From Lytechinus pictus (lineage: Eukaryota), in NCBI RefSeq assembly GCF_037042905.1, contig NC_087247.1, positions 13,082,001-13,146,000 on the forward strand: a stretch of 64,000 nt of DNA, read 5' to 3'. The notes below the pieces were generated by a model that had not been told where the DNA came from, ran no database searches, and saw nothing but the letters and a program-made list of their open reading frames with translations. Positions within the stretch are counted from its first letter, which is position 1. Each line of letters starts with the position of its first letter. Below, piece after piece: positions 1,940-32,809 of this stretch. The position numbers and the translations under genes are program-made.

Positions 1940-2019
1940 TTCCTCATTTGCAACACAGGTATCATTCGCATTTCTGTATTCAGTCATGACAGTGATGCCT
2001 ACGTCTGAATAAGGTAAGG
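1940..2019 (+). promoter_or_regulatory. V1 conserved upstream element + putative non-coding leader exon donor
   Basis: TTCCTCATTTGCAACACAGGTATCA followed by GAATAAG|gtaagg (donor 2014). Repeated ahead of every V exon. Confidence 0.6.
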
Positions 2020-2572
2020 AACATTCGGGTGTCATCGCACCTAATAATATTTTACAGTAAAATTAATTTTGATCTTGTGATGTGGAAGCAAACGTCCATT
2101 GGTAGGCAAAGTTCTCGAATGTAGATTGCTTTCCAAATTTTGCACGCCAAACAGAGACCTTAATCAATAACTCCGCAAAAAAACAAGACGTGAATTTCAT
2201 CTTTTGATTTATATGGATTGGTGCTTGTAGGATTTCACAAGGGTGAAAAGAGGAAAAGGGTCTTCGCAATTGATTATGGTCAAGGTGTCCCATTACAAAT
2301 ATTCAGTATGGCTCTAAAAAGGAGATGATCGATATCCACCCCCACCCCCGGATCCTCCGCAGGTTGTAGGTAGTCAGTCTAAATATAGTCGCAATTGAAT
2401 TTGTAAACAATCTAATATAGGCCTCGGCTTATGCCACAGCTTAAGTGACGAAAGGACACTATAGTACCTCATTTTTTGTAGCGATACAATAATTCAGATA
2501 ATCTATATTCCAACAGAATCGACCATCATTTACCAAAGATCTTAGCGAGTAACCGAGAAAACGGGGGCAATC

Positions 2573-3604
2573 ATGACTCATGGATATGGTTTGAAGCTGG
2601 CGACCTTGGTACTCTGCCTGCTTCACTTCACTCCACCCATCTACTCAGCCCCACTCTCCTCCTACTTGGTATCATTCTTTACTCCTCCTGATGCTGACTC
2701 CGACCTACCATTCAACCACATCACCATCAACAACATCACAGGAGATGTCTATATTGGAGCAAGGGAGAGACTCTATCAACTGAACTCAGACCTGACTCTC
2801 AAACACGCCGTAGATACCGGATCATGCCCTTCTCCAGATGAAGATAACACCGATAATAATAAGCTTCTAGTGGTAGCTCCATCACCTGAGGATAAACTCA
2901 TCACATGTGGTGGCTGTGATGGTTACTGTGAGACAAGAAGCTTTACTAATATATCACATGATGTAGTGAGATATGACTCTTCTGGTACTCAGCTTGTAGT
3001 GACCACATCAGATGCACCTATAGTTGGAGCTGTGGTGTTGGGTGCTGACTATCAAAGCAATGGTGTTGGTACTGCAGATGATGGATTGTACTTATTTACG
3101 GGGATCAGTGATGCGTCAGTGAGCTTACCATCTATCTCAAAGCACAATATTGATGACTTGAGTCACGGACAACGGGTGACAGAACCTCAAGCTTCTTTCC
3201 CACAAAATATTTTCAAACATTTGATACCTTACATGGAAAACCTCTACTATTTCATGTCTAGGGGAAACAATCAGAAGAGTGCATACTTGGGGCGACTGTG
3301 TCGTAATTCATTAGACGAAACATTGTCATCCTACACAGAGATACTTCTACAGTGTGGAACTTATAGTGAGATCCAATCAGGTAATATAGGAGCAACTGGA
3401 TCCCAGCTTGCTAATTCATTCAGCATGGAGAGTGCTGATGATCTTCTGTACGCTGTATTCGGAAGTGATAGTTCTTCTGCTCTATGCATCTATAAGATGA
3501 GCGATGTAGAGCAGAGCTTTGATGATGCTGCCAAGGGATGTAGCCAATCAGGAGATAACAGAGGAACAGAGAACAACTACCTTCAAGATAGTTCATGTAA
3601 TAGT
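2573..3604 (+). CDS. Variable exon V1: signal peptide + N-terminal part of the Sema domain (344 codons), intact
   Basis: ATG at 2573, hydrophobic leader, plexin Sema motifs (FNHITI..TGDVYIGARERLYQL, NKLLVV, LITCG, LGRLC, SYTEI.LQC, LYAVF, SALCIYKM). Phase-0 donor AGT|GTAAGT at 3604/3605; acceptor ttccaacag| at 2516/2517. Confidence 0.9.
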
Positions 3605-4349
3605 GTAAGTGTAAATGTCAAGTAAGCTGAAAATCTTTAAAATCATTCTTACCATAATTCTTGTTCTTAGTGTTATAAATTGAACATGTGGCTCCGGACA
3701 GTCAAAATGGTAGTTTGATCTCTTCAAAACGGAATGAGTTCAACTTTTCGGAATAGACCTATATGGTGCTTTTCTGTTACACTCTAGTCAGTAGCACCGA
3801 ATATATCTGCATATGGCAATTAGTTTGCCGTGTATTTCCATGAATGAACATATTTATGACGACAGAAATGCATAAATCTAAAATCGTGCATTCATTATTC
3901 ATTTATCATTCATTATTATTAGAATGTACTTGATTGGGTTAAATAATGACGATCCACAGTATTGTACGACGCAATGATGGAATCAACATGAAAAATCACA
4001 CAGTTTTCAAAAACTTGGCACTTGGATGTTCAGCGTAAAGTGGTTATCCGATTCACACTTTACGCTGCATTCAAGAGTTAAGTGTTTGGCGAGATTTGAC
4101 ATCTGAGAATTAGCCACTTTAAACAATCATTCCGTACCCAAACGCTGTATCAAGTGGTCACATTAAGTGATTATTTTCACAGGCAATTAACTCGTGATTA
4201 ATTTATCTACACCAGCTAAGAATAAGCCTCATCGTTTTTCTGAAATGTATATTGTATATCATTCCCCCCTTCATTTTTATTATAATTCAATTAGCTTGAT
4301 TTCATTCCTCGTTCTACAGAAGCTTTAAAATGCCATCGACTTGTCGTAA

Positions 4350-4672
4350 AAAATCTAAATTAAAATCTAAAAAAATCCTGGGGCGATCGAGCCTTTGCTC
4401 ATGCCGGACCAGCCCTGTGGAATTCACTACCACACGAGCTGAAGAACTCAAACTCTGTAACATCCTTTAAGGGCAACCTAAAATTGCATTTGTTCACCAG
4501 CAGGTACTAGATTTGATGACAGAAATCTTTCCTTATTTGTAATTTACCCTTTCTTGTACTTCTCTTATAGTTATCTTTACTTTTATGTTTTGCTCTCTTC
4601 TAAGCGCCTTGAGCATTTAATCAAAATGGAAAAGACGCTATATAAATCATATGTATTATCATTATTATTATT
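4350..4672 (+). mobile_element. LINE/SINE 3'-end fragment, shared with 8228-8551
   Basis: Ends gcgccttgagc...gacgctatataaat..(att)n. Present only in the spacers after V1 and V2. Confidence 0.55.
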
Positions 4673-5531
4673 ACATAAAAAGTAAATAGCGAAAATTAAT
4701 CTTATATCAACATGTTCAATGAACGGTACGTGCGCATGTGGATGTCGATTAACTAGCCATAATTCTTTCCTCAACAAAAGCATATACCATTTTCAATCAG
4801 GACTACCGAATTCAGAGCATTTTTTAATTTAAGCCAGAGACCATGAACACAAACATGTATCAATGGATGTTATTCATGTCCTTAGTGGTATAATCTCACT
4901 ACAAGTGCAGTGCAACAAAGGGACAGCGGGTGGTTGCCCTATGGGTTTCAAGTAAGAATAAAGGTGGGATACAATGGGACAAGAAGAGGCTGGTAAGAAA
5001 AAAAAAGTGTTGGAAATAGATGGCTTTGTCGTGAACTGCACTATCATGACTATAGACTTACCCGTACGAATACCTCCATTCCAGACATAAGACTAGTACC
5101 CGTTACAACAAAGTCTTGGTAACACCGCTTCATGATATATGAATATACAATTCCATATTTCTTGCCATGATCAATTATTCGTGTGATATATTGACAAATA
5201 TGGCAGCTCATAATCTCCTCTACGTTCCACTCATCGAAAGTTTGCCTCATTTTTATCAGGGTTCGGAAACACAGTAAAATATTTGCAGCTTTATTGGTGT
5301 GGAAAATGATTGCTAACAATAGGAAAATAAAACTTATCATTTTTGTTGTGATTCACGAAAGAAATACATTGAAACTTTCATTCTCGTTTGTTCTGTAAAA
5401 GTATAATTTTGCTGATTAAATTTCAATCCTTGCACGAGCTGCCATGGCCTTTTGTCTGGGAACAATAGGCCAAATCATCGACCCATCGTCCCAAAAAATA
5501 TTCATATATATATATTGAATTTCATTGCCAG

Positions 5532-5628
5532 ACTTCCTCATTCGCAGCACAGGTATCATTTATATTACTCGTTTCAATCAGCGAGTTGAAAGTAGAGACC
5601 GCGATTCCATCGTGAGAATAAGGTAAGG
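5532..5628 (+). promoter_or_regulatory. V2 conserved upstream element + leader donor
   Basis: ACTTCCTCATTCGCAGCACAGGTATCA; GAATAAG|gtaagg donor at 5623. Confidence 0.6.
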
Positions 5629-6406
5629 AACATTCGGGTGTCATTCATTGCTTAATATTTCTTGAAATTATTGAACTTTTTACTGAAATAAATTCATATT
5701 TTGTGATGTGGTAGCAAAGGTCCATTTATGTACTATGCTACGCGGGCAATGTCCCGGAAAAGGGTGGTGGGGGGGGGGGGTCTGTAGGATTCTGAGGTAC
5801 ACATTGTATGTACATGTACTTCCACTGTTATGTTCATTTAATGATACATACAATGATGATGCGTAGACCTATTTACAGCAACTTTCATTGAAGATCTAAA
5901 TCGAAAATATGTTGAAATTATTTTATACATATTACATTTCTTGATTTCAATTTGAACAATTTAATTCACATGATTGTACTTGACTAAAACTCAAATTAAA
6001 AGGACAAATTAATACAGTCAAGACGTATCGTTGTATGTTGTAAAAAAATACCATGGTCAATATCAGCTTGCTCACAAGTGGACAACACTTTTAAAATGTT
6101 GTCTTTATTGCTATCATTTGATTTTCCATAATTAGGATTGGATTAATGGCAAAATAATAATTTCGCAAATTATTCATGTATATCCGTGCTACAAATCATC
6201 TTTGAATCATCTGCTTGATGGTTGTAGGTATAGTCAGTGGTCGTATTGTCACCCCGGATTTTATTGTGCTCAAATATGTCTAGCTATGATGATGGTACCC
6301 AAGTATGACTGATGTAGTAAGTAATGAAGTTAATTCATATTCAAACAGGATCATCACCTACATTTACCAAAGATCTTGACGAATAACCGAGGAAACAAGG
6401 ACAATC

Positions 6407-7441
6407 ATGACTCAAGGATACGGTTCGAAGCTGGTGATCTTGGTGTGCCTGCTTCATTTCACTCAACCCATCTACTCAGCTCCACTCTCCTCCTACCTGG
6501 TATCATCCTTTACTCCTCCTGATGCTGACTCGGACTTACCATTCAACCACATCACTTTCAACAACATCACTGGAGATGTCTACATCGGAGCACGGGAGAG
6601 ACTCTATCAACTCAACACAGATCTGACACCGAAACACACCATAGATACTGGATCATGTCAACCAGATAAAAATGATATCATTAATACCAATAATATTAGG
6701 CTTCTGGTGGTAGCTCCATCACCTGAGGATATGCTCATCACATGCGGTGGGTGTGACGGTTTTTGTGAGACAAGGAGCTTGAATAATATATCACATGATG
6801 TAGTGAGATATGACTCTTCTGGTACTCAGTATGTGGTTACGAGATCAGATGCACCTGTAGTTGGAGCTGTAGTGTTGAGTGCGGACTACCAGGATGATGG
6901 AGTTGGTACTGCAGATGATGGATTGTACTTATTTACGGGGATCAGTGATGCAACACCAAACTTTCCATCTATATCAAAGCACAATATTGATGAATTGACT
7001 CATGGACAACGGGTGACAGCACCTCAAGCTTCTTCCCCACAAAACATTTTTAAACATTTGATCCCCTTCATGGAAAATCTCTACTATCTCATGTCTAGGG
7101 GAAACAGTCAGAAGAATGCATACTTGGGGCGACTGTGCCGTAATTCATTAGACGAAGCATTGTCATCCTACACAGAGATACTTCTACAGTGTGGAACTTA
7201 TAGTGAGATCCAGTCAGGTCTTATCGGAGAAGCAGGATCCCAGCTAGCTGATTCCTTCAGCTTGGAGAGTACTGACGATCTTCTGTATGCTGTATTTGGT
7301 AGTGATAGTTCATCTGCTCTTTGCATCTATAAGATGAGTGATGTAGAGCAGAGTTTTGACGGTGCTGCCAAGGGATGTAGCCAATCAGGAGATAACAGAG
7401 GAACAGAGAACAACTATCTTCAAGGTAGTTCATGTAATAGA
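6407..7441 (+). CDS. Variable exon V2 (345 codons), intact
   Basis: Paralog of V1. Acceptor tcaaacag| at 6348/6349; phase-0 donor AGA|GTAAGT at 7441/7442. Confidence 0.9.
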
Positions 7442-8730
7442 GTAAGTGTAAATGTCAAGTAAGCTGAAAATCTTTAAAATCATTCTTACCATAATTCTTG
7501 TTCTTAGTGTTATTAATTGAACATATGGCTCCGGACAATCAAAATTGTAGTTTGATCTCTTCAAAACGGAATAAGTTCAACTTTCGGAATAGACCTATAT
7601 AGGCCTATTTGCAGATTATGGGCAATTCAGCATGGTGCCTCTCTGTTACACTCTAGTCAGTAGCACCGAATATATCTGCACATGGCAATTAGTTTGCCGT
7701 GTATTTCCATGAATGAACATATTTATGACGACAGAAATGCATAAAATCCAAAATCGTGCATTCATTATTATTCATTTATCATTTATTCATTATTATTAGA
7801 ATGTACTTGATTGAGTTAAATAATGACGATCCACAGTATTGTATGACGCAATGATGGAATCAACGTGAAAAATCACACAGAGTTTTCAAAAACTTGGCAC
7901 TTGGATGTTCAGCGTAAAGTGGTTATCCGATTCACACTTTACGCTGTATTCAAGAGTTAAGTGCTTGGCGAGATTTGACATCTGAGAAATAGCCACTTTA
8001 AACAATCATTCCGTACCCAAACTCTGTATCAAGTGGTCACATTAAGTGATTATTTTCACAGGCAATTAACTCGTGATTAATTTATCTACACCAGCTAAGA
8101 ATAGGCCTCATCGTTTTCTGAAATGTATATTGTATATCATATCCCCCTTCATTTTAATTATAATTCAATTAGCCTGATTTCATTCCTTGTTTTACAGAAG
8201 CTTTAAAATGCCATCGACTTGTCGTAAAAAAATCTAACTTAAAATCTAAAAAAATCCTGGGGCGATCGAGCCTTTGCTCATGCCGGACCAGCCCTGTGGA
8301 ATTCACTACCACACGAGCTGAAGAACTCAAACTCTGCAACATCCTTTAAGGACAACCTAAAATTGCATTTGTTCACCAGCAGGTACTAGGTTTGATGACA
8401 GAAATCTTTCCTTATTTGTAATTTACCCTTTCTTGTACTTCTCTTATCGTTCTCTTTACTTTAATGTTTTGCTCTCTTCTAAGCGCCTTGAGCATTTAAT
8501 CAAAATGGAAAAGACGCTATATAAATCATATGTATTATCATTATTGTTATTACATAAAAAGTGAATAGCGAAAATTAATCTTATATCAACATGTTCAATG
8601 AACGGACTACCGAATTCAGAGCATTTTTTTAAATTTAAACCAGAGACCATGAACACAAACATGTATCAATGGATCATGTTCTTCGTCGTATAATCATACT
8701 GCCAAGTGCAGTTGAACAAAGGGACAGCAG

Positions 8731-8885
8731 GGGCCTGTTGCATAAAACTTTTAACCTGAGAAAACTCAGGTATTTTTTACCCAAGTTTTTGCCCTGTGTT
8801 AAAGTCAATGGCAGAAATCAGACTAACCTTACTTTTCAGTTTTTACCGGAGTTTTCTAGGTAAAAAAGTTTTATGCAAAAGGCTG
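8731..8885. mobile_element. Small MITE (Harbinger/ISL2EU-like)
   Basis: Imperfect TIR ...TTGCATAAAACTTTT, CAG TSD, absent from the paralogous site at ~4927. Confidence 0.6.
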
Positions 8886-9481
8886 CAGGTGGTCGCCCTC
8901 TGGGATTCAAGTAGGAATAAAGGCGGGATACAGTGGGACAAGAAGAGGCTGGTAAGAAAAAAAGTGTGGGAAATAGATGGCTTTGTCGTGAACTGCACTG
9001 TCATGACTGTAGAATTACCCGTGCAAAATCGCCATTTCAGACATCGGGCCATCTTGACCCGTTACAACAAAGTCTTGGTAACACCGCTTCATGATATATG
9101 AATATACAATTCCATATTTCTTGCCATGATGAATCATTTATGTGATATATTGACAAATATGGCAGCCCACAATCTCCTCTACGTTCCCCTCATCGAAAGT
9201 TTGCCTCATTCAGGGTTCGGAAAAACAGTAAAATGTTAACACAATCATTGGTGTGCAATATGCTTGCTAATAAGAAAAGAAAAACTTATCATTTTTGTTG
9301 TGATTCACGAAAAAAATATATTGAAACTTTCAATTTTGTTTGCTCTGTAAAAGCATAATTTTGTAGATTGAAATTCAATCCTCTCACGAGCTGCCATGGT
9401 ATTTTGCCTGGGAACAAGAGGCCGAATCATCGACCCATCGTCGCTAAAAAGATGTAAATATATATTGAATTTTATGGCAAG

Positions 9482-9572
9482 ACTTCCTCATTTGCAGCAC
9501 TGGTATCAATTATATTACTCTCTTCAAGAGAGACCGCGATGCCTTCGTCATGTTCGTGGGAATAAGGTAAGG
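9482..9572 (+). promoter_or_regulatory. V3 conserved upstream element + leader donor
   Basis: ACTTCCTCATTTGCAGCACTGGTATCA; gtaagg donor at 9567. Confidence 0.55.
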
Positions 9573-10045
9573 AACATTCGGGTATCATTCATTGCTTAAT
9601 ATTTGAACTTTTTACTGATATGAATTTAGATCTTGTGATGTGGTAGCAAAGGTCCATTATGAACTATGTTACGAGGGCAACGTCCTGGAAGGGGGGGGGG
9701 GTCTGTAGGATTCTGAGGTACAATATGTATACAAATATTTACTTCCAATTTTATATTTATTTAATGTTGCATACAATGATTTTGCGTTGGCCTATTCACA
9801 GCCACTATCATTGAAGATCTCATTCTAAGATAGGGCTTATATCGAAATGATTTTATAAATATTACATTTCTACACTTTAATTTGAACAATTCAATTCACA
9901 TGATTGTACTTGATTAAAGATCCAATTGAAATGACAAATTGATACAGTCAACGATTACCGGTGTATGTTGTAAAAAAAATACCATGATCAATATTTGCTT
10001 GCTCACTAGTGGAAAACACTTTTAAGGGGTTGTCTTTATTGCTTT

Positions 10046-11269
10046 CATCACCAGAGATGTCTATATTGGTGCACGAGAGAGACTCTAGCTATCAACTCAA
10101 CTCAGAGCTGTCTCTCAAACACACTGTAGATACCGGATCGTGTCGTTCTCCAAATGAAGACAATACCAATAACAATAGACTTCTGGTGGTAGCTCCATTA
10201 CCTGAGGATAAACTCATCACATGTGGTGGCTGTGATGGTTTCTGCGAGACAAGGAGCTTGACTAATATATCACATGATGTAGTGAGACATGACTCTCTTG
10301 ATACTCAGCGAGTGGTTACGACATCAGATGCAGCTATTGTTGGAACTGTGGTGTTGGGTGCAGACTACCAGGATGATGAAGTTGGTAATGCAGATGGTGG
10401 ATTGCACTTATTTACTGGGATCAGTGATGCCTCAATTACCATTCGTTCTCAAAGAGAAATCTTATTGACCTAAGCTATGGGCAAGAGGTAACACATCCTC
10501 AAACCTCGTCCCGACAAAACGTTTTCAAAATGTTAATCCCTTACATGGAAAACCTCTACTATTTAATGTCTAGGGGAAACATTCAGAAGAGTGCATACTT
10601 GGGGCGACTTTGCCGTAATTCATTAGACGAAGATTTTGCGTCCTACACAGAGATACAACTACAGTGTGGATCTCACAATGAGATCCAGTCAGGTCATATA
10701 GGAGCAGCAGGATCCCAGCTAGCTGATTCCTTCAGCTTGGAGAGTACTGACGATCTTCTGTATGCTGTTTTCGGAAGTGATGTTTCATCTGCTCTTTGCA
10801 TCTATAAGATGAGTGATATAGAGCACAGTTTTGACGATGCTGCCAAGGGATGTAGCCAATCAGGAGATAACAGAGGAACAGAGAACAACTATCTTTGATA
10901 TTTGTGGATTACTTGTTTTAAGTTTGTATTCTGTGTCCGTCTCGAATTTTGTATAGAGTTGTATATATAGTTTGTTTATAATTAGCATTGAAACTAACTT
11001 TAGGGGCTTGCCTTCTCTACAAGCTTTTGCTTTTCTTGGCAAGTCCCTCCGTTCATTTCTTGTTTCTTTTCATTGATAATATTAATGCAACAAATTGTAG
11101 TTTTGTTTAATTTATATTCAACATTTGTTACGAAATTTCATTGATTTGTCTGTATTATCGATTATATTGAATATGTACTGTTACTTTGATTATATTTTGA
11201 AAAAATTGTTGAACGGAAATAAAATCTAAATCAAAAAATCTAAATCTTCAAGGTAGTACATGTAATAGA
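10046..11269 (+). pseudogene. Variable exon V3, pseudo-exon
   Basis: Acceptor, ATG and signal peptide are deleted (intron sequence fused to catcaccagagatgtctat). Frameshifts split it into ORFs 10009-10473 and 10530-10898. There is an insertion at 10896-11243. The GTAAGT donor is retained at 11270. Confidence 0.88.
10896..11243 (+). mobile_element. 5'-truncated non-LTR retroelement 3' end inserted in V3
   Basis: Flanked by ATCTT duplication; ends with AATAAA and an (AAATCT)n-like tail. Confidence 0.6.
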
Positions 11270-11482
11270 GTAAGTGTAAATGTCAAGTGAGCTAAAAATC
11301 TATCAGATCATTCTTAACAAAATTCTTGTTGTTAATGTTATTAATTGAACATATGGCTCCGGGCAATCAGAACGGTAGTTTGATCTCTTAAAAAAGGAAT
11401 GAGTTCAATTTCGAAATAGGCCTACATAAGCCTATTATGGGCACAATACAGCATGGTGCTTCAGTAACACCGAATATGTCTG

Positions 11483-15759: not shown

Positions 15760-17061
15760 ATGGCTGCTGCTCGACCAATAGCTCCTGGGAGGCTCTTGCA
15801 TTTGCTAAGTCTGAGAAGGCAAATCCAAAACGTTCAAGACAGACATGTCATATTGATGGCCTTACTCATCCGTAGACGTCAAAGACATGCAAGGCAAAGA
15901 AGAAGGTGGTGGGTCAAACCCTGGATTGAGAGACGTGTACTGTTTGGACAGTATGATAATCTGATGACGGAGTTGCAGAGAGAATGTCAGGGTGACTTCC
16001 TGAACTACATGAGGATGCCACCAGAAACGTTCCTTGAACTGTTGCAGCGCATCACTACGAGGATAGAGAAGTCCTATCGCTACCGGCAGCCACTGGATCC
16101 TGGGCTCAAACTGGCCATCACCTTGAGATATCTTGCGACCGGCAACAGCTACAAAACCCTGCAGTATGCCTTCCGTGTTGCCCATAATACGATCTCTCTG
16201 TTTATACCAGAGGTGTGCCAGGCCATCATCAGTGAATACCAAGATGAAGTATTTTCCTGTCCAACTACCCCAGATGAATGGAGAGAAGTGGCACGGACTT
16301 ACGCTGACAGATGGAACTTTCATCATGTCTGTGGAGCCTTGGACGGAAAACACGTGGCCATCAGAAATCCACCAGGCTCTGGTACGATCTACTACAACTA
16401 CAAGGGTTTCTACAGCCTCATCCTCTTGGCCCTAGTTGATGGCAATTACAAGTTCCTCTGGGCTGACGTTGGTAATCCCGGTTCATCATCGGATGCCCAG
16501 GTCTTCAACCACAGCCCGCTGAGACGTGGACTGGAGAATGGTACTCTTGGCCTGCCAGATCCAGAGCCCCTGCCAGATGATGACCGAGACACCCCTTACT
16601 TCTTAATTGGGGACGACGCCTTCCCTCTCAGGACATGGATGCAGAAGCCGTACTCCAACCGTGAGCAGACCGACGAGGAGAGAATCTTCAACTACCGTCT
16701 CTCGAGGGCTCGCCGTGTGGTGGAGAACAGCTTTGGCATCCTTGCACATCGCTGGAGATGCTTGTTGAGTACCCTACAGCTTGATCCAGAAAAAGCCAGG
16801 ACAGTCATTATGGCCTGCATGTGCCTCCACAACCTAATGAGAGATCGTTTTCCTGGGCTTCAGAACATTGACGTTGACCGTGAAGATGAGTTGGGCAACC
16901 ACATCCCTGGGGCATAAAGAAACGCAGCAGTTCTGCAGGATGTTGAACGAGTTGGCGGAGGCTACCAGGCAAACAAAGAGGGCAAGAAGCTGAAAACTTA
17001 CCTGAAGCACTACTACAACAGTCCAGTTGGAAGCCTGCCCTGGCAACAACACATGATATAG
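15760..17061 (+). CDS. Harbinger DDE transposase (HARBI1-like), premature TAA at 16915-16917
   Basis: Motifs LAITLRYLATG, GALDGKH, YYNYKG.YS, GDDAFPL, FNYRLSRARRVVENSFG. The frame continues after the TAA through YYNSPVGSLPWQ to TAG at 17061. Confidence 0.9.
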
Positions 17062-23037: not shown

Positions 23038-23116
23038 TTCCTCATTTGCAACACAGGTATCATTCGCTTTTCTGTTCAAGTCGAGACAGTGATGCCTACG
23101 TCTGAATAAGGTCAGG
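23038..23116 (+). promoter_or_regulatory. V4 conserved upstream element + leader donor
   Basis: TTCCTCATTTGCAACACAGGTATCA; GAATAAG|gtcagg donor at 23111. Confidence 0.55.
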
Positions 23117-23833
23117 AACATTCGGGTGTCATTACACCTAATATTATTGAAATCATTGTACTTATTTTACTGTAAAATGAATTTTGATCTTGTGGTGTGG
23201 AAGCAAAAGTCCATTGGTGGGCAAAGTTCTCGAACAGTTGAATGTATAGATTACTTTCGGAATTTTGCACGCCAAACAGAGTCCTTAATCAATAACTCCG
23301 CAAAAACAAAACGTGAATTTCATCTTTTGATTTATAGGGATTGGTGCTTGTAGGATTTCACAGGGGTGATATTTTGCTTAAAAAACTCCAACAAGCAAAA
23401 GAAAATAAAAACTAAGAAGAAGGTATTCGTTCCAGAAGGGAGGAGAACTATGTCACGAAAAGTTTTACAGCACCCCCTCCCCCCAAAAAAAAAAAATTGA
23501 AAAAAAAAGAGAAAAAGGGTCTTCACATTTGATTATGGTCAACGTGTCCCATTACAAATATTTATTATGGCTCTAAAAAGGGGGATGATCGATATCCACC
23601 ATTACCCCCGGATCCGCCGCAGGTTGTAGGTAGTCAGTCTAAATATAGTGGCCATTGAACTTTTAAACCATCTAATATAGGGGCTTCGACTTATGCCACA
23701 GCTTACGTGACGAAAGGACATATATTACCTCAATTTTTGTACCGATACAATAATCCAGATAATTTATATTCCAACAGAATTGACCATCATTTACCAAAGA
23801 TCTTAGCGAGTAACCGAGAAAACGGGGGCAATC

Positions 23834-24864
23834 ATGACTCATGGATATGGTTTGAAGCTGGCGATCTTGGTGCTCTGCCTGCTTCACTACACTCAACCCA
23901 TCTACTCAGCCCCACTCTCCTCCTACCTGGTATCATTCTTTACTCCTCCTGATGCTGACTCCAACCTACCATTCAATCACATCACCATAAACAACATCAC
24001 TGGAGATGTCTATATTGGAGCAAGGGAGAGACTGTATCAACTCAGCTCAGACCTGACTATCACACACACCGTAGATACCGGATCATGCCCTTCTCCATAT
24101 GAAGATAATACCAATAATAATAGGCTTCTGGTGGTAGCTCCATCACCTGAGGATAAACTCGTCACGTGTGGGGTTGTGATGGGTACTGTGAGACAAGAAG
24201 CTTGAACAATATATCACGTGATGTAGTGAGATATGATGTAATTGATGATCAGCTTGTGGTGACCACATCAGATGCACCCATTGTAGGAGCTGTGGTGTTA
24301 GGTGCTGACCTTCAAGGCAATGGTGTTGGTACTGCAGATGGTGGATTGTACTTATTTACTGGGATCAGTGATGCAACTATTATGAATCCATCTATCTCAA
24401 AGCACAATCTGGTTTACCTACGCCACGACCAAAAGGTAGCCCGACCCTTATCTTCTGCCCCGCGAAACATTTTTAAACATTTGATTCCTTCCATGGAAAA
24501 CATTTATTATTTAATGTCTAGGGAAAACAGTCAGAAGAGTGCATACTTGGGGCGACTGTGCCGTAATTCATTAGATGAACAGTTAGCATTCTACACAGAG
24601 ATAGAAATACAATGTGGGTCTTACAATGAGATTCAGTCAGGTCACATAGGAGCAGCAGGATCCCATCTTGCTGACTCATTCAATATTGATAGTACTGAAG
24701 ATCTTTTGTATGCAATATTTGGAAGTGATATTTCATCTGCTCTGTGCGTCTATAAGATGAGTGATGTAGAGCAGAGTTTCGACGATGCTGCCAAGGGATG
24801 TAGCCAAACAGGAGATAACAGAGGAACGGAGAACAACTACCTTCGTGATAGTTCATGTAATAGA
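23834..24864 (+). pseudogene. Variable exon V4: full length but with a single 1-bp deletion (young pseudo-exon or assembly error)
   Basis: 1031 nt = 344 codons minus 1. It reads tgtggggttgt at ~24166-24176 where V6 has tgtgggggttgt (CGGC). Acceptor at 23777/23778 and GTAAGT donor at 24865 are intact. Confidence 0.75.
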
Positions 24865-26783
24865 GTAAGTGTAAATGTCAAGTGAGCTGAAAATCTTTCA
24901 AATAATTTTTACCATAACTCTTGTAGGTAGTGTTATTGATTGAAAATAATTGTGCCTCAGTCGATCAGAATAGTAGTTTAATCTCTTCAAAATTCAAAAT
25001 TGAATTAGTTCAAATTTCGAAATTCTAATAGGTTTTAAACGATTGAATAATGAAGAATGAATATGACTATGAAGAATGAATATAACACCCTGGTGGCCTA
25101 TTATAATGGAAGCTAAGCTTCTTATAGCAGGTCACCACGTTTCTTTTCCATCTCATCCAATGTTCCGTAATAATTTATGAAGTGCATTATACATATTATT
25201 CTGTGATTTTTTACTTTTTGTTCTTTGCTTGTCACATAATGATTTACTGTTTGCTGTTGTCGGAATCGAAGCTAAATAAAGATTCCTTTAAATAGGCATA
25301 TATATTCAGACTATGGGCAATACATCATGGCGCTCTTTTGTTACATTCTAGCATGTCTACTAAATAATTATGTCTGCACAAGGCACTTTAGTTTGCCGAG
25401 TACTTTCATGTATGATACTATATTCACGATGATAGAAATGCAAAAAATTCAAAACCATGCATTCATATCATAAAAATGTATTATTGATTTTCATGATGAA
25501 GATTCACTGTATTGTATGGCGCTATAATGGAGTTCTCAAAAACTTGGCACTTGAATGTTCAGCGTAAAGTGGTTATCCGATACACACTTTATGCTGCATT
25601 CAAGAGTTAATTTTTTGGCGAGATTTGACCTCTGAAAATTAGTCACTTTAAACAATCATTTCGTACCCAAACGCTGTATTTAGTGGTCACATTAAGTGAT
25701 TATTTATATTTTCACAGTCAATTAACTCTTATTTATCTACACCATCTAAGAATAAGCCTCATCGTTTTCTGAAATGTATGTTGTATATCTTTTTCCTCCT
25801 TCAAGTCTATTATGTTTCAATTTGCACGATTTCAGTCTTCGTTCTACAGAAGCTTTAAAGCGCCATTGTCTTGTCATAAAGTCGACATGCATGAAATGTT
25901 GTATGTCAACATGGCGAGAAAAGTTATGTTATAAGTTACGACATATAAAAAGTAAATAGCAAAATTAATATTATATCAACATGATAAATGAACGGTGCGT
26001 GCGCATGTGGATGCCGATCTTTAACTAGCAATAATTCTTTCCTCAACAAAAGCATATACCATTTTCAATCATGACTACCGAATTCAGAGCATTTTTTATA
26101 TTTAAACCAGAGACCATGAACACAAACATGTATCAATGGATCATGTTCTTAGTGGTATAATCATACTAACAAGTGCAGTGGAACAAAGGGACAGCAGGTG
26201 GTCGTCCTCTGTGATTCAAGTGAGAATAAAGGCGGGATACAATGGGACAAGAAGAGGCTGGTAAGAAAATAAGAGTGTGGGAAATAGATGGCTTTGTCGT
26301 GAACTTCACTGTCATGACTGTAGACTTACCCATGCAAATACCCCCGTTTCAGACATAAGGCCAGACTGACCCGTTACAACAAAGTCTTGGTAACACCGTT
26401 GCATGATATGTAAATATACAATTCCATATTTCTTGCCATGATGAATCATTCATGTGATATATTGACAACATATGGCAGCCCACAAACGCCTTCGTTCCAC
26501 TCATTGAAAATTTGTCTCGTTTTCATCAGGGTGCAGAAACACAGTAGGACCCACGTCTAAAATGTTTGCAGAGTCAATGGTGTGGAAACTTATTTTCTTG
26601 TGATTCACGAAAAAATAATAATGTGACCTTCATTATTGTTTGTTCTGTAATGCTCTTTAATTTTATAGCCAGATTAAATTCAAATTCTTGTACGCGATGC
26701 CATGGCCTTTTGTCAGAGAGTAATTAGCCAATTCATCGATCCATAGTCGCCAAAAAAATATATGTATTGAATTTTAGGGCAAG

Positions 26784-26909
26784 ACTTCCTCATTTGCCGC
26801 ACAGGTATCACTTATATTACTCTATTCAATCAGGGAGTTGAAAGTAGAGACATCGATGCCTTCGTGGGAATAAGGTACCACCGGTAAGGAACCGGTTAGA
26901 AAGGTAAGG
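26784..26909 (+). promoter_or_regulatory. V5 conserved upstream element + locally triplicated leader donor
   Basis: ACTTCCTCATTTGCCGCACAGGTATCA; candidate donors at 26875 (gtacca), 26884 and 26904 (gtaagg). Confidence 0.55.
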
Positions 26910-27559
26910 AACATTCGACTGTCATTCATTGCTTAATATTTCTTGAAATTATGGAACTTTTTACTGAAATAAATTTAGATCAAGTGATGTGGTAGCAAAA
27001 GTTCATCGATGTGCTAGGGTAAGAGGGCAATGTTCCGAGGGGAAGGGAGGGGCCTGTACGATTATGAGGTTAGAAATATATACTTTGTACTTCCAATTTT
27101 ATGTTCATTACAGTAGATTTTTCTATGGGATGCATATGAATTTAGAACAACTTTCATTGAAGATCTGAATCGATAATATTTTTAAGAAATTATTTCGTGC
27201 ATTTTATATTTCTGTATCATAATTCAAACAGATTGATATGCATGATCATACCTGGCAAAAACTTTACTTAAAAGAGAAACTTAAAACAGGCTACTAGTAT
27301 TTTATAAAGTAATCATTTATGAAAATATCAAACCTGTTTGTCGGAGTGGACAGCCCTTTTAAGGGGTCGTCTTCATTTTGAACAATGTTAATATTGTTGT
27401 TAACATATATAAAGTAATTTTAGTAATAATGATAACATCTTACTTCCATTATGATTGTACAGGCCGGAGTTAACAAGATAGATCATTTATATTCTCTATA
27501 ACAGAATCGACCTTCATTTACCAAGATCTTGGCGAAATACCGAGGAAAAGGGGACAATC

Positions 27560-28594
27560 ATGACTCAAGGATATGGTTTGAAGCTGGCGACCTTAGTCTT
27601 CTGCCTGCTTCACTTCACTCCACCCATCTACTCAGCTACACTCTCCTCCTACCTGGTATCATCCTTTACTCCTCCTGATGCTGACTCGGACCTACCATTC
27701 AACCACATCACCATCAACAATTACATCACCGGTGATGTCTATATTGGAGCAAGGGAGAGACTCTATCAACTCAACACAGCCCTGACTCTCAAACACACAG
27801 TAGATACAGGATCGTGTCGTTCTCCAAATGAAGATAATACCAATAACAATAGGCTTCTAGCGGTAGCTCCATCACCTGAAGATAAACTCATCACTTGTGG
27901 TGGTTGTGATGGTTTCTGTGAGACAAGGAGCTTGACTAATATATCACATGATGTAGTGAGACATGACTCTTCTGGTACTCAGTATGTGGTTACGACATCA
28001 GATACACCTATCGTTGGAGCTGTACTGTTGGGTGCGGACTACCAGGAAGATGGAGTTGGTACTGCAGATGAGAGATTATACTTATTTACGGGGATCAGTG
28101 ATGCATCACTTACCTTTCGATCTATCTCAAAACACAACCTTTTTGATCTTAAGAATGAACAACATGTAACACAACCCCTATCTTCTGCCCCACAAATCAT
28201 TTTCAAATATTTGATTGCTTATAGGGAAAACCTCTTCTATTTCATGTTTAGGGGGAACATACAGAATAATGCACATTTGGGGCGACTTTGCCGTAATTCA
28301 TTAGATGAACAGTTAGCATCCTACACAGAGATACAACTTCAATGTGGATCTCACAATGAGATCCAGTCAGGTCATATCGGAGCAGCAGGATCCCAGTTAG
28401 CTGATTCATTCAGCATGGAGAGTACAGATGACCTTCTGTATGCTGTATTCGGAAGTGAAAGTTCATCTGCTCTATGCATCTACAAGATGAGTGATGTAGA
28501 GCAGAGCATTGACGATGCTGCCAAGGGATGTAGCCGATCAGGAGATACAAGAGGAACGGAGAGCAACTACCTTCAAGATAGTACATGTAATAGT
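27560..28594 (+). CDS. Variable exon V5 (345 codons), intact
   Basis: Paralog of V1/V2. Acceptor tataacag| at 27504/27505; phase-0 donor AGT|GTGAGT at 28594/28595. Confidence 0.9.
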
Positions 28595-29592
28595 GTGAGT
28601 GTTGATGTCAAATGAGCTGAAAATCTTTCTAATCATTTTTACCGTAATTCTTGTAGGTAGTATTATTGATTGAACGTGTCATATGCCTCCGTAAATCAGA
28701 ATGGTAGTTTGATCTCTTCAAAACTGAATGAGTGCAAATTTCGAAATAGGCCTATAGACCTCTATCCAGATTATGGGCAATAAATCGTGGCGGTCCCCTG
28801 TTACACTCTAGTCAGTCATACTAAATATGTCTACACAAGGCATTTAGTTTGCCGTGTACTTTCATGTATGGTAATACATTCACGGTAATAGAAATGCATA
28901 AAATTCAAAACCATGCATTCATTATTATTAAAATGTACTTGATTTTAATGATGACGATTATACAGTATTGTATGACGCTATAATGGAATCAATATAAAAA
29001 ATCACAGAGTTCTAAAAAACTTAGTACTTGAATGTTATGCGTAAAGTTTGTATCTTAATTGGTTAAAGTTTGACATCTGAGAATGATCCACTTCAAATGG
29101 ACTTTCCCTATTCAAGATCAACGCTGTGTTAAGTTAACTCAGTTAAGTTAAGGCAGTTAACTCGCAATCCATCTCCAATCTCTTAGAATTAGCCTAATTG
29201 TTTCCTAATTCGTCGTTTTTTCTTTTCCTAATTCATTAATATATGAATATGATTTCAGTCTGCATTCTACATGCATGCAAAAGCTTTTAAGTGCCATCGA
29301 CTTGTCGAGACGGCGAGGTACGTTTGCTTCGTCGACACATTAAACATTGTATGTGAACATGGCGAGATACGGTATCTCGCCAAGTCAACCAATGAGAAGT
29401 TTTATGGCAACATGACGAGATATGCTTTCTTTTCAAATGGACATATAAAAAGTAAATGGCGAAAATTCATTTTATATCCATGCATAGCGTGGGTGCACCT
29501 GGATGTTGATATCTAACCAGCAGGCCTACACCATTTTCAAATATACCAAAGGACTACCAACTTAAGAGCTTTTTTGTATTACAACCAGTGAC

Positions 29593-31789
29593 CATGGGCG
29601 GAAATCCCAGGGGGGACAGGGGGACGTGTCCCCCCTACTCAAAATAGTAGAGGGGACACAATATCAAATGTCCCCCCTACTATTTTTGGTCTTTTATGAT
29701 GGTAAGAAATACATCATTATAAATCGAAATAAAACATGTATTTTGGGACGGGATGACCTTACTTTGGCGATGATAACCTTTTTTTTGCTTGTCAAATTTT
29801 GGTTTTTAAAAAGTGCTCTGTAAAAATGTTAGTTTTATGGTCTGAACTTGCGCTGCGCTCGCAAAGTTTGATTTATCAGGTACCTACAGGTATTATTTTC
29901 GTGTATTCCATAAAGTTTTTAAAATATCCCTTTTCAGGTCTGATTGCCAAGACGTATATCAGCTAGCGCGCTGCACGCTCGCATTTTGATTGGCGAGTTA
30001 TATAAATGTTTCAATATAGATTATACAACAAACTATATAAAATCCCCTTTTTATGACAGTTTGTCAAAAATTTTAGCTCGCGATTTGCGCTCGCATTGAT
30101 GGTTAAAAATATATTAACTGATGCATCCTATTCAGAATCACAAAAGTGAAATGTCCAGTTTTTATGCCATTATATCATCAGATTTCGCACCCTCATTAGG
30201 CATTAATAATTGAATTGTCCCTTTTGTTTCATCTCGCGCTTAGCAAGAGGAATAGGAATATAGTCATCATTTTCATATGATGACATGTCGTAAGGATGTC
30301 CCGGTCCTATGTCAAAACTTAAGTAATACTAATATCAGCTCTTTTTTAAGTGCGATCCATATCCACCTTACAATTTTTCTTCAAAGTGCTTGAAATATAA
30401 ACTGAAATTGACTATTTTTCAGATCGGAATATCAAAGTTTCATGATTTTCATGATTAAAGTTGTATTTAGAATGCCTAGATTCTAGGTCTAAATATAAAA
30501 CACGCTCGTGCATGTTTATTCAGATACTCAACTTGTTCTCTAATTTAAATTAAGCCGTTAAATCATTATCCAGTTTCAGATCACAATATCAATTTTTTTC
30601 TGCTCGCGCTTTGTGATCGCATTATTAATGTAGTAAGACCCCATATTACTCATCCTTTTGATGATTTACAAAACATGAACAGAGTGGCCCATTTTTAGGT
30701 CTAAATCTCGAAAAAAAAATTCTGCTCGCGCTTCGCGCTAGCATCAATCGTTAAATTATATAGCTATCCTGTTCACGATTTAAAAAACTGATTAAAATTG
30801 TCCATTCTTTCTTTAGAAAGTTAAAATTTTTCAGCTCGCGCCTCGCGCTCGCATTTTTTGATCGTTGAAATATGTAACGCCTTCATGGCTAAGTGCAAGC
30901 AGTCCTTAACAGGTGCCTTTTCAACAGGTACCAGTTCAAAACGTATATAAAAATGTTCTGCTCGCGCTTTGCGCTCGCATTATTAATACTCACCCTTTTT
31001 AGGTTTTACAAAACATGAATAGACTGAGTGTCTCGTTCAGTAAATATTATAGGACTAAATCTCGAAATTTTCCGCTCGCGCTTCGCGCTCGCATTTAATT
31101 GTTTATTTATATACCTATTCTGCTTGAGTTACAAAAAGTGCTTAGAATTTCCATTATTAATACTCACCCTTTTCAGGATATACAAAACATGAATAGAGTG
31201 TCTCGTTCAGTAAATATTATAGGACTAAATCTCGAAATTTCCGCTCGCGCTACGCGCTCGCATTAATTAATTACTTATATACCTATTCTGCTTGAGTTAC
31301 AAAAAGTGCTTAGAATTTCCATTCTTTAGGTGAACATGTCCAAAAAATTCAGCTCGCGTTTCGCGCTCACATTATTTGATTGTTAAATGCTACTTTAACA
31401 GGTATCTTTTCTATCAGTTCATTTCTGCTCGCGCTTTGCGTTTGTAGTAATTATTAAGTTGCATAAACATCTTTTTCAGGATAACAAACATTGCCCAGAA
31501 TCAGTTCAAATTTTAGGAAAATATACATAAAATTTCCAAAAAAAAATAGCTCGCGGTTCGCGCTCGCATCATATAAATAAGGATTATGATATTATATATT
31601 TATTTATAAGAATAAAGCTAAGAAGTGACTAATGAGGACTGCCCCTTCAAAGAAACAAACAAAAATCATCTTCGAGCTGCCAATCGGGGAAAATATGGCT
31701 GAAACAAATTACCGCCCCCCCCCCCTATTGGCGAAGGCTGGATCCGCCCCTGTGTCCCCCCTACCTTTTGGGAGAGATTTCCGCCCCTG
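29593..31789. mobile_element. Non-autonomous hAT-like element with internal GCTCGCGCTTCGCGCTCGCA repeats
   Basis: TIR CA(T/G)GGGCGGAAATC, 8-bp TSD CCAGTGAC. Confidence 0.8.
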
Positions 31790-32162
31790 CCAGTGACCAT
31801 CACCCAATACATGTATCAATTGATTTTATCAGTGGCATCATACTAAAAGGGGCATGCAGAACAGCAAACGGGCAGCGGGCAACCGCCCCCATTGGTTTCA
31901 AGTGAAAATAAAGGGGTACATAGGACAAGATGAGGCGGGTAAGAAAAACAAAATTATAAGTGAAATAGATGGCTTTGTCACGAGTAAGACTTATCCCTAT
32001 GTATACCCCTTTACAAACACAAGGCCGTCGGGAACAACAAAGTCTTGGTAACACCACTGCATGATATATAAACAAACAAAAGTTCCATATTTATTGCTAT
32101 GATAAATCATTCATGTGCTATATTGACAAATATGGCAGTTCACAATCGCACACGTTTCACTC

Positions 32163-32414
32163 CAGTGGCGTAATGAGCCAAAATTTGGCTAGATATGGCG
32201 TATCCCGTAAAATTAATACAAAGTTGTAAATGAGCGAAGCAAGCGAGCAAATATTTCGACATTTTTATTTCGAAAATCCAAGTTTGTGATAGACTTTGAC
32301 ATATTATTCGGAAAATAATATCTATTTCAACCTTATCCCTTTCCTTTTCTTTCCTTTTTTTCCCTTGGTCGTGAAAAGCCCCAAGCCCCCCCCCCCCCAA
32401 CCTGTACGCCAATG
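32163..32414. mobile_element. hAT-like MITE
   Basis: TIR CA(G/T)TGGCGTA, 8-bp TSD TTTCACTC. Confidence 0.78.
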
Positions 32415-32729
32415 TTTCACTCATCAAAGTTTTTTATTATTATTATTCATCAGGGTTCGTATTAAACTTCGTAACACAGTAAAATGTTCGCAGCATAAAA
32501 TTGGTGTGAAAACTGTTTCATAGCAATAAGAAATGTAACTTATTATTTTTGTTGTGAGACACGAAAAAAAAGTGTGTGAACTTCATTCTTGTTTGCTTTG
32601 TATTGGTACAGTTTTATAGTCATATTTTAAATTCAATTTCAGTACCATAACCTTTAGTCAGAAAGCGATAACTCAATTCATCGATTCCTCGTCGCAAAAC
32701 GATATATATTTCTAATTTCAGGGCAGTAT

Positions 32730-32809
32730 TTCCTCATTTGCAACACAGGTATCATTCTTATTTCTGTATTCAGTCCTGACCGCGATGCCTTCGTCAGAAT
32801 AAGGTAAGG
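32730..32809 (+). promoter_or_regulatory. V6 conserved upstream element + leader donor
   Basis: TTCCTCATTTGCAACACAGGTATCA; GAATAAG|gtaagg donor at 32804. Confidence 0.55.

What the first reader, a model, noticed from the sequence alone, without database searches (positions are those of the whole stretch)
1940..32809. Each V cassette has its own conserved upstream element and non-coding leader exon, suggesting promoter choice
Seen: (AC/GT/AT)TTCCTCATT(T/C)GC..CAC(A/T)GGTATCA at 1940, 5532, 9482, 23038, 26784 and 32730. Each is followed 70-120 nt later by AAG|gt(a/c)agg, then 0.5-0.7 kb of more diverged intron, then an aacag| acceptor (acceptor deleted in V3). The motif is better conserved than its flanks. 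Established: TTCCTC is the reverse of the ETS/PU.1-type GAGGAA core, and Pcdh promoters share a conserved sequence element. Inference: each V has its own promoter; the ETS-like site hints at immune-cell expression (speculative).
Basis: partly seen in the sequence, partly recalled or inferred. Interest (0 to 1): 0.72.

Follow-up and report, generated by a model that had tools for sequence, protein, structure and literature searches.

The report
Own promoters for urchin plexin V-cassettes
A sea-urchin (Lytechinus pictus) plexin receptor gene has a row of seven duplicated front-end cassettes, and each carries the same strongly conserved 25-base element at the start of its own small non-coding exon, so the gene can probably begin at different cassettes and make receptors with different ligand-binding heads.

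Summary
TTCCTCATTYGCNNCACWGGTATCA occurs exactly six times in the window and once 2.2 kb upstream (V0). It occurs nowhere else in the 812-Mb genome. Across 10 copies (7 L. pictus, 3 L. variegatus), 21 of 25 bases are invariant. That is far above third codon positions (31% invariant) and matches the best coding windows.

Each motif opens a 73-118-nt non-coding leader exon, followed by a 0.5-0.7-kb intron and a 1.1-kb exon. That exon encodes the signal peptide and about 345 aa of a plexin Sema domain.

RNA-derived contigs contain exactly the predicted GT..AG joints 2013|2517 (V1) and 5622|6349 (V2). Coverage starts at the motif: the V2 contigs end at about 5533. A TATA-like run lies 27-29 nt upstream in one cassette subtype. 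The element therefore sits at the transcription start, in the first 25 nt of the RNA, not upstream of it.

A RefSeq model joins V5 to the single set of constant exons. V1, V2 and V5 are intact and under purifying selection. V0, V3, V4 and V6 are broken.

This is a protocadherin/UGT1A/sDscam-like alternative-promoter layout in a plexin. I found no report of it. The ETS/immune-cell idea and one-promoter-per-cell choice are untested.

The parts
1940..1964 (+). V1 conserved 25-nt element (start of the leader exon)
1940..2013 (+). V1 non-coding leader exon (74 nt, subtype A). It holds a mini-uORF at 1995-2012.
   Evidence: GT..AG joint 2013|2517 in run X4; coordinates
2517..3604 (+). V1 coding exon. 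ATG at 2573, 344 codons, intact. It encodes the signal peptide and the N-terminal part of the plexin Sema domain. Donor AGT|GTAAGT.
5505..5516 (+). TATA-like run TATATATATATT. Its first T lies 29 nt before the V2 motif.
   Evidence: Sequence only, function inferred.
5534..5558 (+). V2 conserved 25-nt element
5534..5622 (+). V2 non-coding leader exon (89 nt, subtype B). The 5' ends of RNA contigs fall at about 5533-5536.
   Evidence: Joint 5622|6349 in X1 (88 nt on the leader side) and in X4. No coverage at 4852-5442.
6349..7441 (+). V2 coding exon. ATG at 6407, 345 codons, intact. Donor AGA|GTAAGT.
   Evidence: A V2-like exon is joined to a C1-type exon at 7441 in X2.
9484..9566 (+). V3 element and leader exon (83 nt)
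10046..11269 (+). V3 coding-exon remnant. The acceptor and the 5' part are deleted, and it contains a stop.
23038..23110 (+). V4 element and leader exon (73 nt, donor GTCAGG)
23778..24864 (+). V4 coding exon, frame-shifted (it matches in two pieces)
26786..26903 (+). V5 element and leader exon. The donor region is duplicated, giving possible donors at 26874 and 26903. A TATA-like TATATGTA starts at 26759.
27505..28594 (+). V5 coding exon. ATG at 27560, intact. It is the first coding exon of RefSeq plexin model XP_063952485.1. The junction in that model implies a donor at 28600.
32730..32803 (+). V6 element and leader exon (74 nt)
33495..35134 (+). V6 coding exon, broken by stops and an insertion
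39781..39996 (+). Constant exon C1a (72 codons, phase 0). It continues the Sema domain after a V exon.
40052..40270 (+). Constant exon C1b, a duplicate of C1a
42369..63518 (+). Further single-copy constant exons (42369-42518, 43063-43182, 49288-49425, 52980-53129 ... 63402-63518). The gene runs on to about +83.8 kb beyond the window.

Best explanation
The 25-nt element marks the transcription start region of a separate promoter in every V cassette of one plexin gene.

Each cassette is a self-contained 5' module made of:
- a proximal promoter, with a TATA-like run 27-29 nt upstream in subtype B and CCAAT-like and TATA-like boxes in subtype A;
- a 73-118-nt non-coding leader exon that begins with the element;
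- a 0.5-0.7-kb intron;
- a 1.1-kb exon holding the rest of the 5' UTR, the signal peptide and about 345 aa of the Sema domain.

Transcription that starts at one cassette gives leader(x)-V(x). The phase-0 donor of V(x) is then spliced to the shared exon C1a or C1b and the rest of the plexin (PSI, TIG and cytoplasmic domains). This yields receptors that differ in the N-terminal two thirds of the ligand-binding Sema propeller.

Shown:
- the array, the element and its excess conservation;
- the leader-to-V splices of V1 and V2, and their transcript starts near the element;
- the V5-to-C1a join in a RefSeq model;
- purifying selection on V1, V2 and V5.

Inferred:
- that the element acts as DNA (a core-promoter or factor-binding site at +1..+25);
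- that V1 and V2 also reach the constant exons in L. pictus;
- that only one promoter is used per transcript or per cell.
For: - The array is seven cassettes about 3.9 kb apart, upstream of one set of constant exons.
- The element is found only in this array in the whole genome. It is also present in three orthologous L. variegatus cassettes.
- 21 of 25 columns are invariant, against 31% at third codon positions (P=5e-8). Identity is 0.948, against 0.55 and 0.65 in the flanks.
- V6 keeps 25/25 identity with V1 although its flanks are only 50-59% identical to V1's.
- GT..AG joints at 2013|2517 (X4) and 5622|6349 (X1 and X4, two studies) match the prediction. There is no coverage at 1700-1896 or 4852-5442 in those runs. 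The V2 contigs end at about 5533-5536.
- The TATA-like run starts 27-29 nt before the element in V2 and V5.
- RefSeq XP_063952485.1 (1857 aa) runs V5, C1a, C2 and on to the cytoplasmic domain, skipping the dead V6.
- V2-like and V1-like exons are joined to C1-type exons in the relative's run X2.
- dN/dS is 0.23-0.29 at dS 0.32-0.35 among V1, V2, V5 and LvA.
Against: - The RNA evidence is assembled contigs only. These cannot fix a TSS, a strand or an expression level. The 'RNA' label of runs X1-X4 is itself a guess.
- V1-to-C1 and V2-to-C1 junctions were not seen in L. pictus itself. The organism-B junction contigs could come from a neighbouring paralogous gene.
- NCBI-type models call V1 and V2 as separate ~350-aa proteins.
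- Four of the seven cassettes are broken yet keep the element.
- In subtype A the TATA-like box starts 18 nt upstream of the element, which does not fit a start at its first base.
- V coding exons have their own 3' splice sites, so how internal V exons are skipped is unexplained.
Confidence: 0.7

Rival explanations
1. Each cassette is an independent small gene. Its transcript (leader plus V exon) reads into the intron, stops after ...VSVNVK and encodes a ~350-aa secreted Sema fragment. Only the V used by the annotation (V5) belongs to the plexin gene.
For: Database models of 344-371 aa ending in the read-through peptide exist in L. pictus, L. variegatus and S. purpuratus. Runs X4 and X2 have coverage just past the V2 donor.
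Against: - The same split of the V exon from the rest is also made at single-V plexin genes of S. purpuratus, where the constant exons follow within 1.4-1.8 kb. It therefore looks like an annotation habit.
- 345 aa is only part of a seven-bladed Sema propeller.
- The GTAAGT/GTGAGT donors are conserved in phase 0 with C1.
- V-to-C1 junctions are seen.
Confidence: 0.1
2. The element is conserved for a role in the RNA, not as promoter DNA. It would be a 5'-terminal UTR element controlling translation or stability, for example a TOP-like pyrimidine start CTTCCTC or an interplay with the leader mini-uORF.
For: The element lies inside the transcript. The V2 contig begins CTTCCTC. A mini-uORF is present in 8 of 10 leaders.
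Against: There is no covariation and only a weak predicted structure (-5.9 kcal/mol, 0 compensatory pairs). The -1 base differs between subtypes (C in B, T in A). The uORF is lost in V2 and LvC. This rival does not exclude a promoter role.
Confidence: 0.12
3. The element is an ETS/PU.1-type site (GAGGAA on the minus strand) that restricts the cassettes to immune cells.
For: GAGGAA is invariant in all 10 copies. Subtype B reads ATGAGGAAGTC, close to a PU-box. ETS sites near start sites are common (my own knowledge).
Against: - The base pair after GGAA is AC or AT in subtype A and V6, so the canonical GGAAGT is not conserved.
- The other 19 conserved bases are not explained by an ETS site.
- No tissue information was available, because the runs are coded.
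Confidence: 0.1
4. The conservation has no function. It is left over from recent duplication or from gene conversion among the cassettes.
For: The cassettes are young duplicates with 70-92% identity along the whole unit. Dead cassettes keep the element.
Against: The neutral yardstick inside the same units (third codon positions 31% invariant, dS about 0.33) is far exceeded. Conversion tracts would not stop at 25 nt. Subtypes A and B align only around the element, the leader and the start of the intron.
Confidence: 0.05

Closest known systems
Clustered protocadherin (Pcdh alpha/gamma) variable exons with a conserved sequence element (CSE) in each promoter (my own knowledge: Wu and Maniatis 1999; Tasic et al. 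2002)
   Same: There is a tandem array of homologous variable 5' exons, each with its own promoter carrying a shared conserved element, spliced to one set of constant exons. The variable part encodes the extracellular recognition region.
   Different: No CTCF-like motif is present. Each cassette has two exons (non-coding leader plus V exon), so V exons have 3' splice sites. The array holds only 7 cassettes, 3 of them intact. The V exon encodes part of one domain, not a whole ectodomain. Stochastic choice is untested.
Chelicerate sDscam genes with tandemly arrayed multi-exon 5' cassettes and alternative promoters (PMC4835542)
   Same: The 5' cassettes have several exons, each preceded by its own promoter. 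Intron sequence just after the variable cassette is retained. The array arose by 5' segmental duplication that included the promoter.
   Different: The protein family differs (Ig versus plexin Sema). Here the first exon of each cassette is non-coding. Here one sharply conserved 25-nt element sits at the start site. The sDscam promoters were tested with reporters and 5'-RACE; these have not been.
UGT1A locus (my own knowledge)
   Same: Alternative first exons, each with its own promoter, are joined to shared downstream exons. Pseudo-exons sit among functional ones.
   Different: UGT1A first exons have no upstream leader exon and no single shared promoter motif. Its promoters are regulated by tissue and inducers.
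Echinoderm plexin expansion (PMC6374515, citing Whittaker et al. 2006)
   Same: Plexins are known to be expanded in echinoderms. This genome has about 20 paralogues on contig C17 plus neighbours on C3.
   Different: That expansion is by whole-gene duplication. A tandem array of alternative 5' Sema cassettes inside one plexin gene is not described there, and five full-text searches found no report of one.

Membership tests
Variable-first-exon cluster with per-exon promoters (Pcdh/UGT1A/sDscam type) | Tandem homologous 5' cassettes upstream of a single set of constant exons | tested here: met
   Seven cassettes run from -2203 to 35134. The constant exons from 39781 onward are single-copy, apart from the C1a/C1b pair.
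Variable-first-exon cluster with per-exon promoters (Pcdh/UGT1A/sDscam type) | Each cassette is transcribed from its own start site | tested here: inconclusive
   Met for V1 and V2: their own leader-to-V joints are present and the upstream bins have no coverage. For V0 and V3-V6 it is only inferred from the conserved element. Contigs cannot fix a TSS.
Variable-first-exon cluster with per-exon promoters (Pcdh/UGT1A/sDscam type) | Each variable exon is spliced to the first constant exon | tested here: inconclusive
   V5-to-C1a is present in XP_063952485.1. V2-like and V1-like exons are joined to C1-type exons in the relative's run X2. V1 and V2 junctions in L. pictus were not seen.
Variable-first-exon cluster with per-exon promoters (Pcdh/UGT1A/sDscam type) | A shared conserved promoter element in every cassette | tested here: met
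   The 25-mer is present in 7 of 7 cassettes and in 3 of 3 L. variegatus cassettes, with 21 of 25 positions invariant.
Variable-first-exon cluster with per-exon promoters (Pcdh/UGT1A/sDscam type) | One promoter chosen per cell or allele | not testable with these tools
   This needs single-cell or allele-resolved RNA data.
Pcdh-type CSE | The promoter element contains a CTCF site | tested here: not met
   A CTCF consensus scan gave 3 hits against 3.6 expected, none at a cassette-conserved position.
Pcdh/UGT1A-type variable exon | The variable exon is the true first exon and lacks a 3' splice site | tested here: not met
   Each V coding exon is preceded by a leader exon and uses an aacag| acceptor.
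ETS/PU.1 binding site | A GGAA core with conserved flanks (GAGGAAGT) | tested here: inconclusive
   The GAGGAA core is invariant. The GT flank is present only in subtype B. Binding cannot be tested here.
TATA plus initiator core promoter | A TATA box about 30 nt upstream of an initiator at the mapped start | tested here: inconclusive
   In subtype B the first T of the TATA-like run is 27-29 nt before the element, and the contigs end there. In subtype A the TATA-like TATATTT starts 18 nt upstream of the element. CTCATT fits the BBCABW initiator consensus, but the A lies 6 nt inside the contig end.
Plexin | Sema, PSI, TIG/IPT and plexin cytoplasmic domains in one chain | tested here: met
   The V exons match Pfam Sema and solved plexin A and B structures. 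The full model P0192 carries the Sema, PSI, TIG_plexin, Plexin_cytopl and Plexin_RBD Pfam domains.

The most novel reading that the evidence does not exclude
The array is a true promoter-choice system. A dedicated factor reads the invariant 25-nt start-site element and activates one cassette per cell or cell type. The plexin is thereby given alternative Sema-domain faces, multiplied by the C1a/C1b choice. This would be an echinoderm counterpart of protocadherin or sDscam diversity, built on a guidance or immune receptor whose GAP site was noted elsewhere in this scan as inactive.
Probability: 0.25. Interest if true: 0.8.

Novelty: new variant of a known kind. Interest (0 to 1): 0.6.

Why it matters
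Receptor diversity made by alternative promoters over tandem variable exons is known from only a few families (protocadherins, UGT1A, chelicerate sDscam). A plexin that swaps most of its semaphorin-binding Sema domain this way would add a new family and a new phylum.

It also offers a compact system that can be tested directly. The cassettes are 3.9 kb, the element at the start site is sharply defined at 25 nt, and sea urchins allow easy reporter injection.

On the practical side, it shows that the many ~350-aa 'plexin-B2-like' gene models in urchin annotations are probably first coding exons of larger plexin genes.

Tried and rejected
- **Transposon origin of the element.** Rejected. There are only 7 genome-wide hits, all in the array.
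- **Same element in other plexin promoters.** Absent (up to 7 mismatches) within 2.5 kb upstream of 15 C17 paralogues and from the 10-kb locus L012 that holds the neighbouring plexin's first exon and about 6 kb upstream of it. The neighbour shares 86% identity in coding sequence only.
- **S. purpuratus.** The 25-mer is absent from the likely orthologue L014 (up to 3 and up to 7 mismatches) and from L031 and L032 (up to 8 mismatches). Only the likely orthologue L014 keeps the donor AGGTAAGGAACAT and a 74-nt leader that starts TTCCTTGTTCG, a 9/11 match. This is suggestive, not proof.
- **RNA structure in the leader.** No covariation.
- **Docking-site type pairing between the element and the intron before C1a.** The duplex energy of -18.1 is no better than shuffled controls.
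- **CTCF motif.** Not enriched.
- **Rfam families.** Nothing in the cassettes; only a borderline tRNA-like hit at 36985-37041.
- **The 1-mismatch 12-mers at 58296 and 61055.** Chance-level, and they lack the rest of the element.
- **The bacterial promoter scan tool.** Not used, because it is not appropriate for an animal gene.
- **Whittaker et al. 2006.** Not held in the library.
Full report
**What the region is**

The window is G000:C3:13082001-13146000 of a Lytechinus pictus assembly. Contig C17 of G000 has the same length (31,958,207) as the contig that carries NCBI L. pictus plexin proteins.

BLAST of the window against itself shows tandem units about 3.9 kb long. Each unit holds an exon of about 1.1 kb. 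That exon encodes a signal peptide and about 345 aa matching the Pfam Sema domain and the N-terminal Sema region of solved plexin A and B structures.

A six-frame search of the whole genome finds seven such cassettes here: V0 just upstream of the window, and V1-V6 inside it. V1, V2 and V5 are open. V0, V3, V4 and V6 carry stops or frameshifts. Other hits are a neighbouring plexin first exon 60 kb upstream and about 20 paralogues on C17.

Downstream of V6 lies one set of constant exons: C1a 39781-39996, its duplicate C1b 40052-40270, then 42369-42518, 43063-43182, 49288-49425 and so on.

**Checking the observation**

- The 12-mer TTCCTCATTYGC has six exact matches at the stated places. With up to one mismatch there are 8 matches, against 0.76 expected.
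- The 25-mer TTCCTCATTYGCNNCACWGGTATCA, allowing 2 mismatches, occurs 7 times in 812 Mb. All are on the + strand in this array, and the seventh is at window -2203 before V0. It is therefore not a dispersed repeat.
Leader exons are 1940-2013, 5534-5622, 9484-9566, 23038-23110, 26786-26903 (with a duplicated donor) and 32730-32803.
- Each leader ends in AAG|GTAAGG, except V4, which has GTCAGG.
- Introns are 503-726 nt, with aacag| acceptors at 2517, 6349, 23778, 27505 and 33495.
- In V3 the acceptor and the 5' part of the exon are deleted.

**Is the conservation more than duplication history?**

I aligned 3-kb units of the seven L. pictus cassettes with three L. variegatus cassettes. The latter come from locus L015, which carries the same element three times.

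| Region | Invariant columns or identity |
|---|---|
| 25-nt element | 21/25 invariant; mean pairwise identity 0.948 |
| Third codon positions of the V exon | 31% invariant |
| First and second codon positions | 56-58% invariant |
| 150 nt upstream of the element | 24% invariant |
| Deep intron | 23% invariant |
| Upstream flank (pairwise identity) | 0.55 |
| Downstream flank (pairwise identity) | 0.65 |

The element window ranks 4th of 2416 windows of 25 columns; only one non-overlapping coding window is better. The binomial probability of 21/25 at the third-position rate is 5e-8, which survives correction for the roughly 100 independent windows.

The intact V exons differ by dS 0.32-0.35 with dN/dS 0.23-0.29. 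Neutral sites have therefore diverged by about a third while the element has hardly changed.

V6 shares 25/25 bases with V1, although its flanks are only 50-59% identical to V1's. Two leader/intron subtypes exist: A (V0, V1, V4, LvA, LvB) and B (V2, V3, V5, LvC). BLAST aligns them only around the element, the leader and the first part of the intron. The element is under constraint.

**Transcript evidence**

One run search and one read-laying run were allowed, and all four runs returned assembled contigs, not raw reads.

- Runs X1 and X4 are organism A, from two studies. Many of their contigs are 100% identical to the window. Both contain the joint 5620/5622 to 6347/6349 with GT..AG ends. X4 also contains 2011/2013 to 2515/2517.
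- The X1 contig carries 88 nt on the leader side, so it begins at about 5533, one base before the element. The X4 depth figure implies a contig of about 87 nt ending at the same place.
- X1 and X4 have no coverage at 4852-5442 or 1700-1896. X4 does cover introns and intergenic DNA elsewhere.
- V1 and V2 transcripts therefore begin in the bin that holds the element, not at a far-upstream leader.
- In V2 and V5 a TATA-like run (TATATATA, TATATGTA) starts 29 and 27 nt before the first base of the element. That is the usual spacing for a start at the element's first bases.
- In subtype A the TATA-like TATATTT starts only 18 nt upstream, so the exact start may differ there.
- The element is therefore best described as the start-site region, +1 to about +25 of the leader, not as an upstream site.

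Contigs cannot prove a TSS. This step is inferred.

**Do V exons reach the constant exons?**

- The V donors (AGT|GTAAGT, AGA|GTAAGT, AGT|GTGAGT) lie after a complete codon, and C1a reads on in phase 0 as VNIEPPDAV....
- A representative search gave a long urchin plexin, P0050. Using its N-terminal region as query found P0192 = XP_063952485.1, 'plexin-B1-like [Lytechinus pictus]', 1857 aa, on this contig.
- The first 345 residues of P0192 are V5. It continues with C1a, C2, C3 and on to exons at window +83.8 kb, skipping the dead V6. Its junction reads ...CNSVS|VNIEPP, which implies a donor 6 nt beyond the homologous V2 position.
- Run X2 is organism B. Its contig carries AATAG, which matches the LvB acceptor of L. 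variegatus. In X2 a V2-like exon stops matching at 7443 and continues with a C1-type exon start (junction 7441|GT...). A V1-like exon does the same. The same run also shows a leader-to-V joint.
- V1-to-C1 and V2-to-C1 junctions in L. pictus itself were not among the rows shown.

**The rival 'separate small genes'**

Many database entries of 344-371 aa ('plexin-B2-like') in three urchin species are V exons read through into the intron, ending ...VSVNVK. The same split is made at S. purpuratus plexins that have a single V exon followed within 1.4-1.8 kb by the PSI/TIG/cytoplasmic exons. I therefore read it as an annotation habit, perhaps helped by intron retention after the V donor. Similar retention is reported for sDscam cassettes.

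**What the element is not**

- No CTCF-like motif accompanies it.
- It does not form a covarying RNA structure.
- It has no complement before C1a that could act as a docking site.
- It matches no Rfam family.
- It is absent upstream of 15 C17 paralogues and from the neighbouring plexin's first-exon locus L012.
- The 25-mer is absent from three S. purpuratus loci. The likely orthologue L014 has a single V exon, the conserved donor AGGTAAGGAACAT and a leader of exactly 74 nt that begins TTCCTTGTTCG. This hints that the leader and its pyrimidine-rich start predate the array.

**The ETS idea**

GAGGAA on the minus strand is invariant. The next two bases are GT only in subtype B; they are AC in subtype A and AT in V6. 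The remaining 19 conserved bases are not explained by an ETS site. No tissue information was available. The idea is possible but unsupported.

**Comparison and novelty**

The layout works like clustered protocadherins, UGT1A and, most closely, chelicerate sDscam, which has multi-exon 5' cassettes each with its own promoter (PMC4835542).

It differs in five ways:
- the protein family is a plexin;
- each cassette begins with a non-coding leader exon;
- V exons have their own acceptors, which leaves open how internal V exons are skipped;
- there is no CTCF site;
- only three cassettes are intact in this assembly.

Echinoderm plexin expansion by gene duplication is known (PMC6374515). Five full-text searches found no report of tandem 5' Sema cassettes within a plexin gene.

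**Verdict**

The 'own promoter and leader exon' reading is supported for V1 and V2 by RNA contigs and for V5 by a RefSeq model, and it extends to the others by conservation. The exact TSS, exclusive choice, the binding factor and immune-cell expression remain open.

Noticed in passing
window 2077-2099, 5703-5725, 9635-9657, 23192-23214, 26984-27006, 32872-32894: A second conserved block, GTGRTGTGRWAGCAAANGTYCAT, lies 64-81 nt into every leader intron (6 of 6, none expected by chance). The first ~25 intron bases, GTAAGGAACATTCGGGTGTCATT, are also conserved well beyond the splice consensus. Together these may form a downstream promoter-proximal or splicing element.
   Followed up: partly
window 1995-2012 (V1) and the homologous places in V0, V3-V6, LvA and LvB: A mini-uORF, ATG CCT (A/T)CG ... 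GAA TAA (MPTSE*/MPSWE*), ends one base before the leader donor. It is present in 8 of 10 leaders and lost (ATT) in V2 and in its L. variegatus counterpart LvC.
   Followed up: partly
window 74074-83808 (beyond the window; loci L010 and L033): The C-terminal exons of RefSeq model P0192, which starts with V5, map here. The V array and that cytoplasmic region therefore belong to one gene of about 86 kb.
   Followed up: partly
database proteins P0003-P0007 and P0202 (XP_054750171.1): Several L. pictus 'nr' V-type proteins are at most 87% identical to any V in this assembly, so another assembly or haplotype seems to carry a different V repertoire. P0202 (2303 aa) strings two V exons, C1a and C1b into one chain. 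That is what a pipeline produces when alternative cassettes are read as constitutive exons.
   Followed up: partly
loci L014, L032 (S. purpuratus), L015 (L. variegatus) and window V1, V2: Gene calls in three urchin species split the first coding (Sema) exon of plexins into a separate ~350-aa 'plexin-B2-like' protein that reads into the intron. This is probably a systematic mis-annotation.
   Followed up: partly
window 15760-16917 (+): An intact 385-aa ORF with a DDE_Tnp_4 (Harbinger/PIF-type) transposase domain lies in the 11.5-kb gap between V3 and V4, next to a GC-rich stretch at 18-22 kb. It is a transposon insertion that interrupts the array.
   Followed up: no
window 4261-4654: This intergenic stretch has contig depth 10-100 times that of the neighbouring exons in all four runs, with many internal joints. 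It is probably a dispersed repeat expressed or present elsewhere.
   Followed up: no
window 36985-37041 (-): A borderline tRNA-like Rfam hit (29.3 bits against a gathering score of 29) lies between V6 and C1a. It may be a tRNA-derived SINE.
   Followed up: no
L015:19080-19140: In the L. variegatus cassette LvC, homology upstream of about -45 is replaced by other sequence including a CA repeat. The TATA-like run and the 25-nt element are kept, which suggests that the minimal conserved promoter is very short.
   Followed up: no
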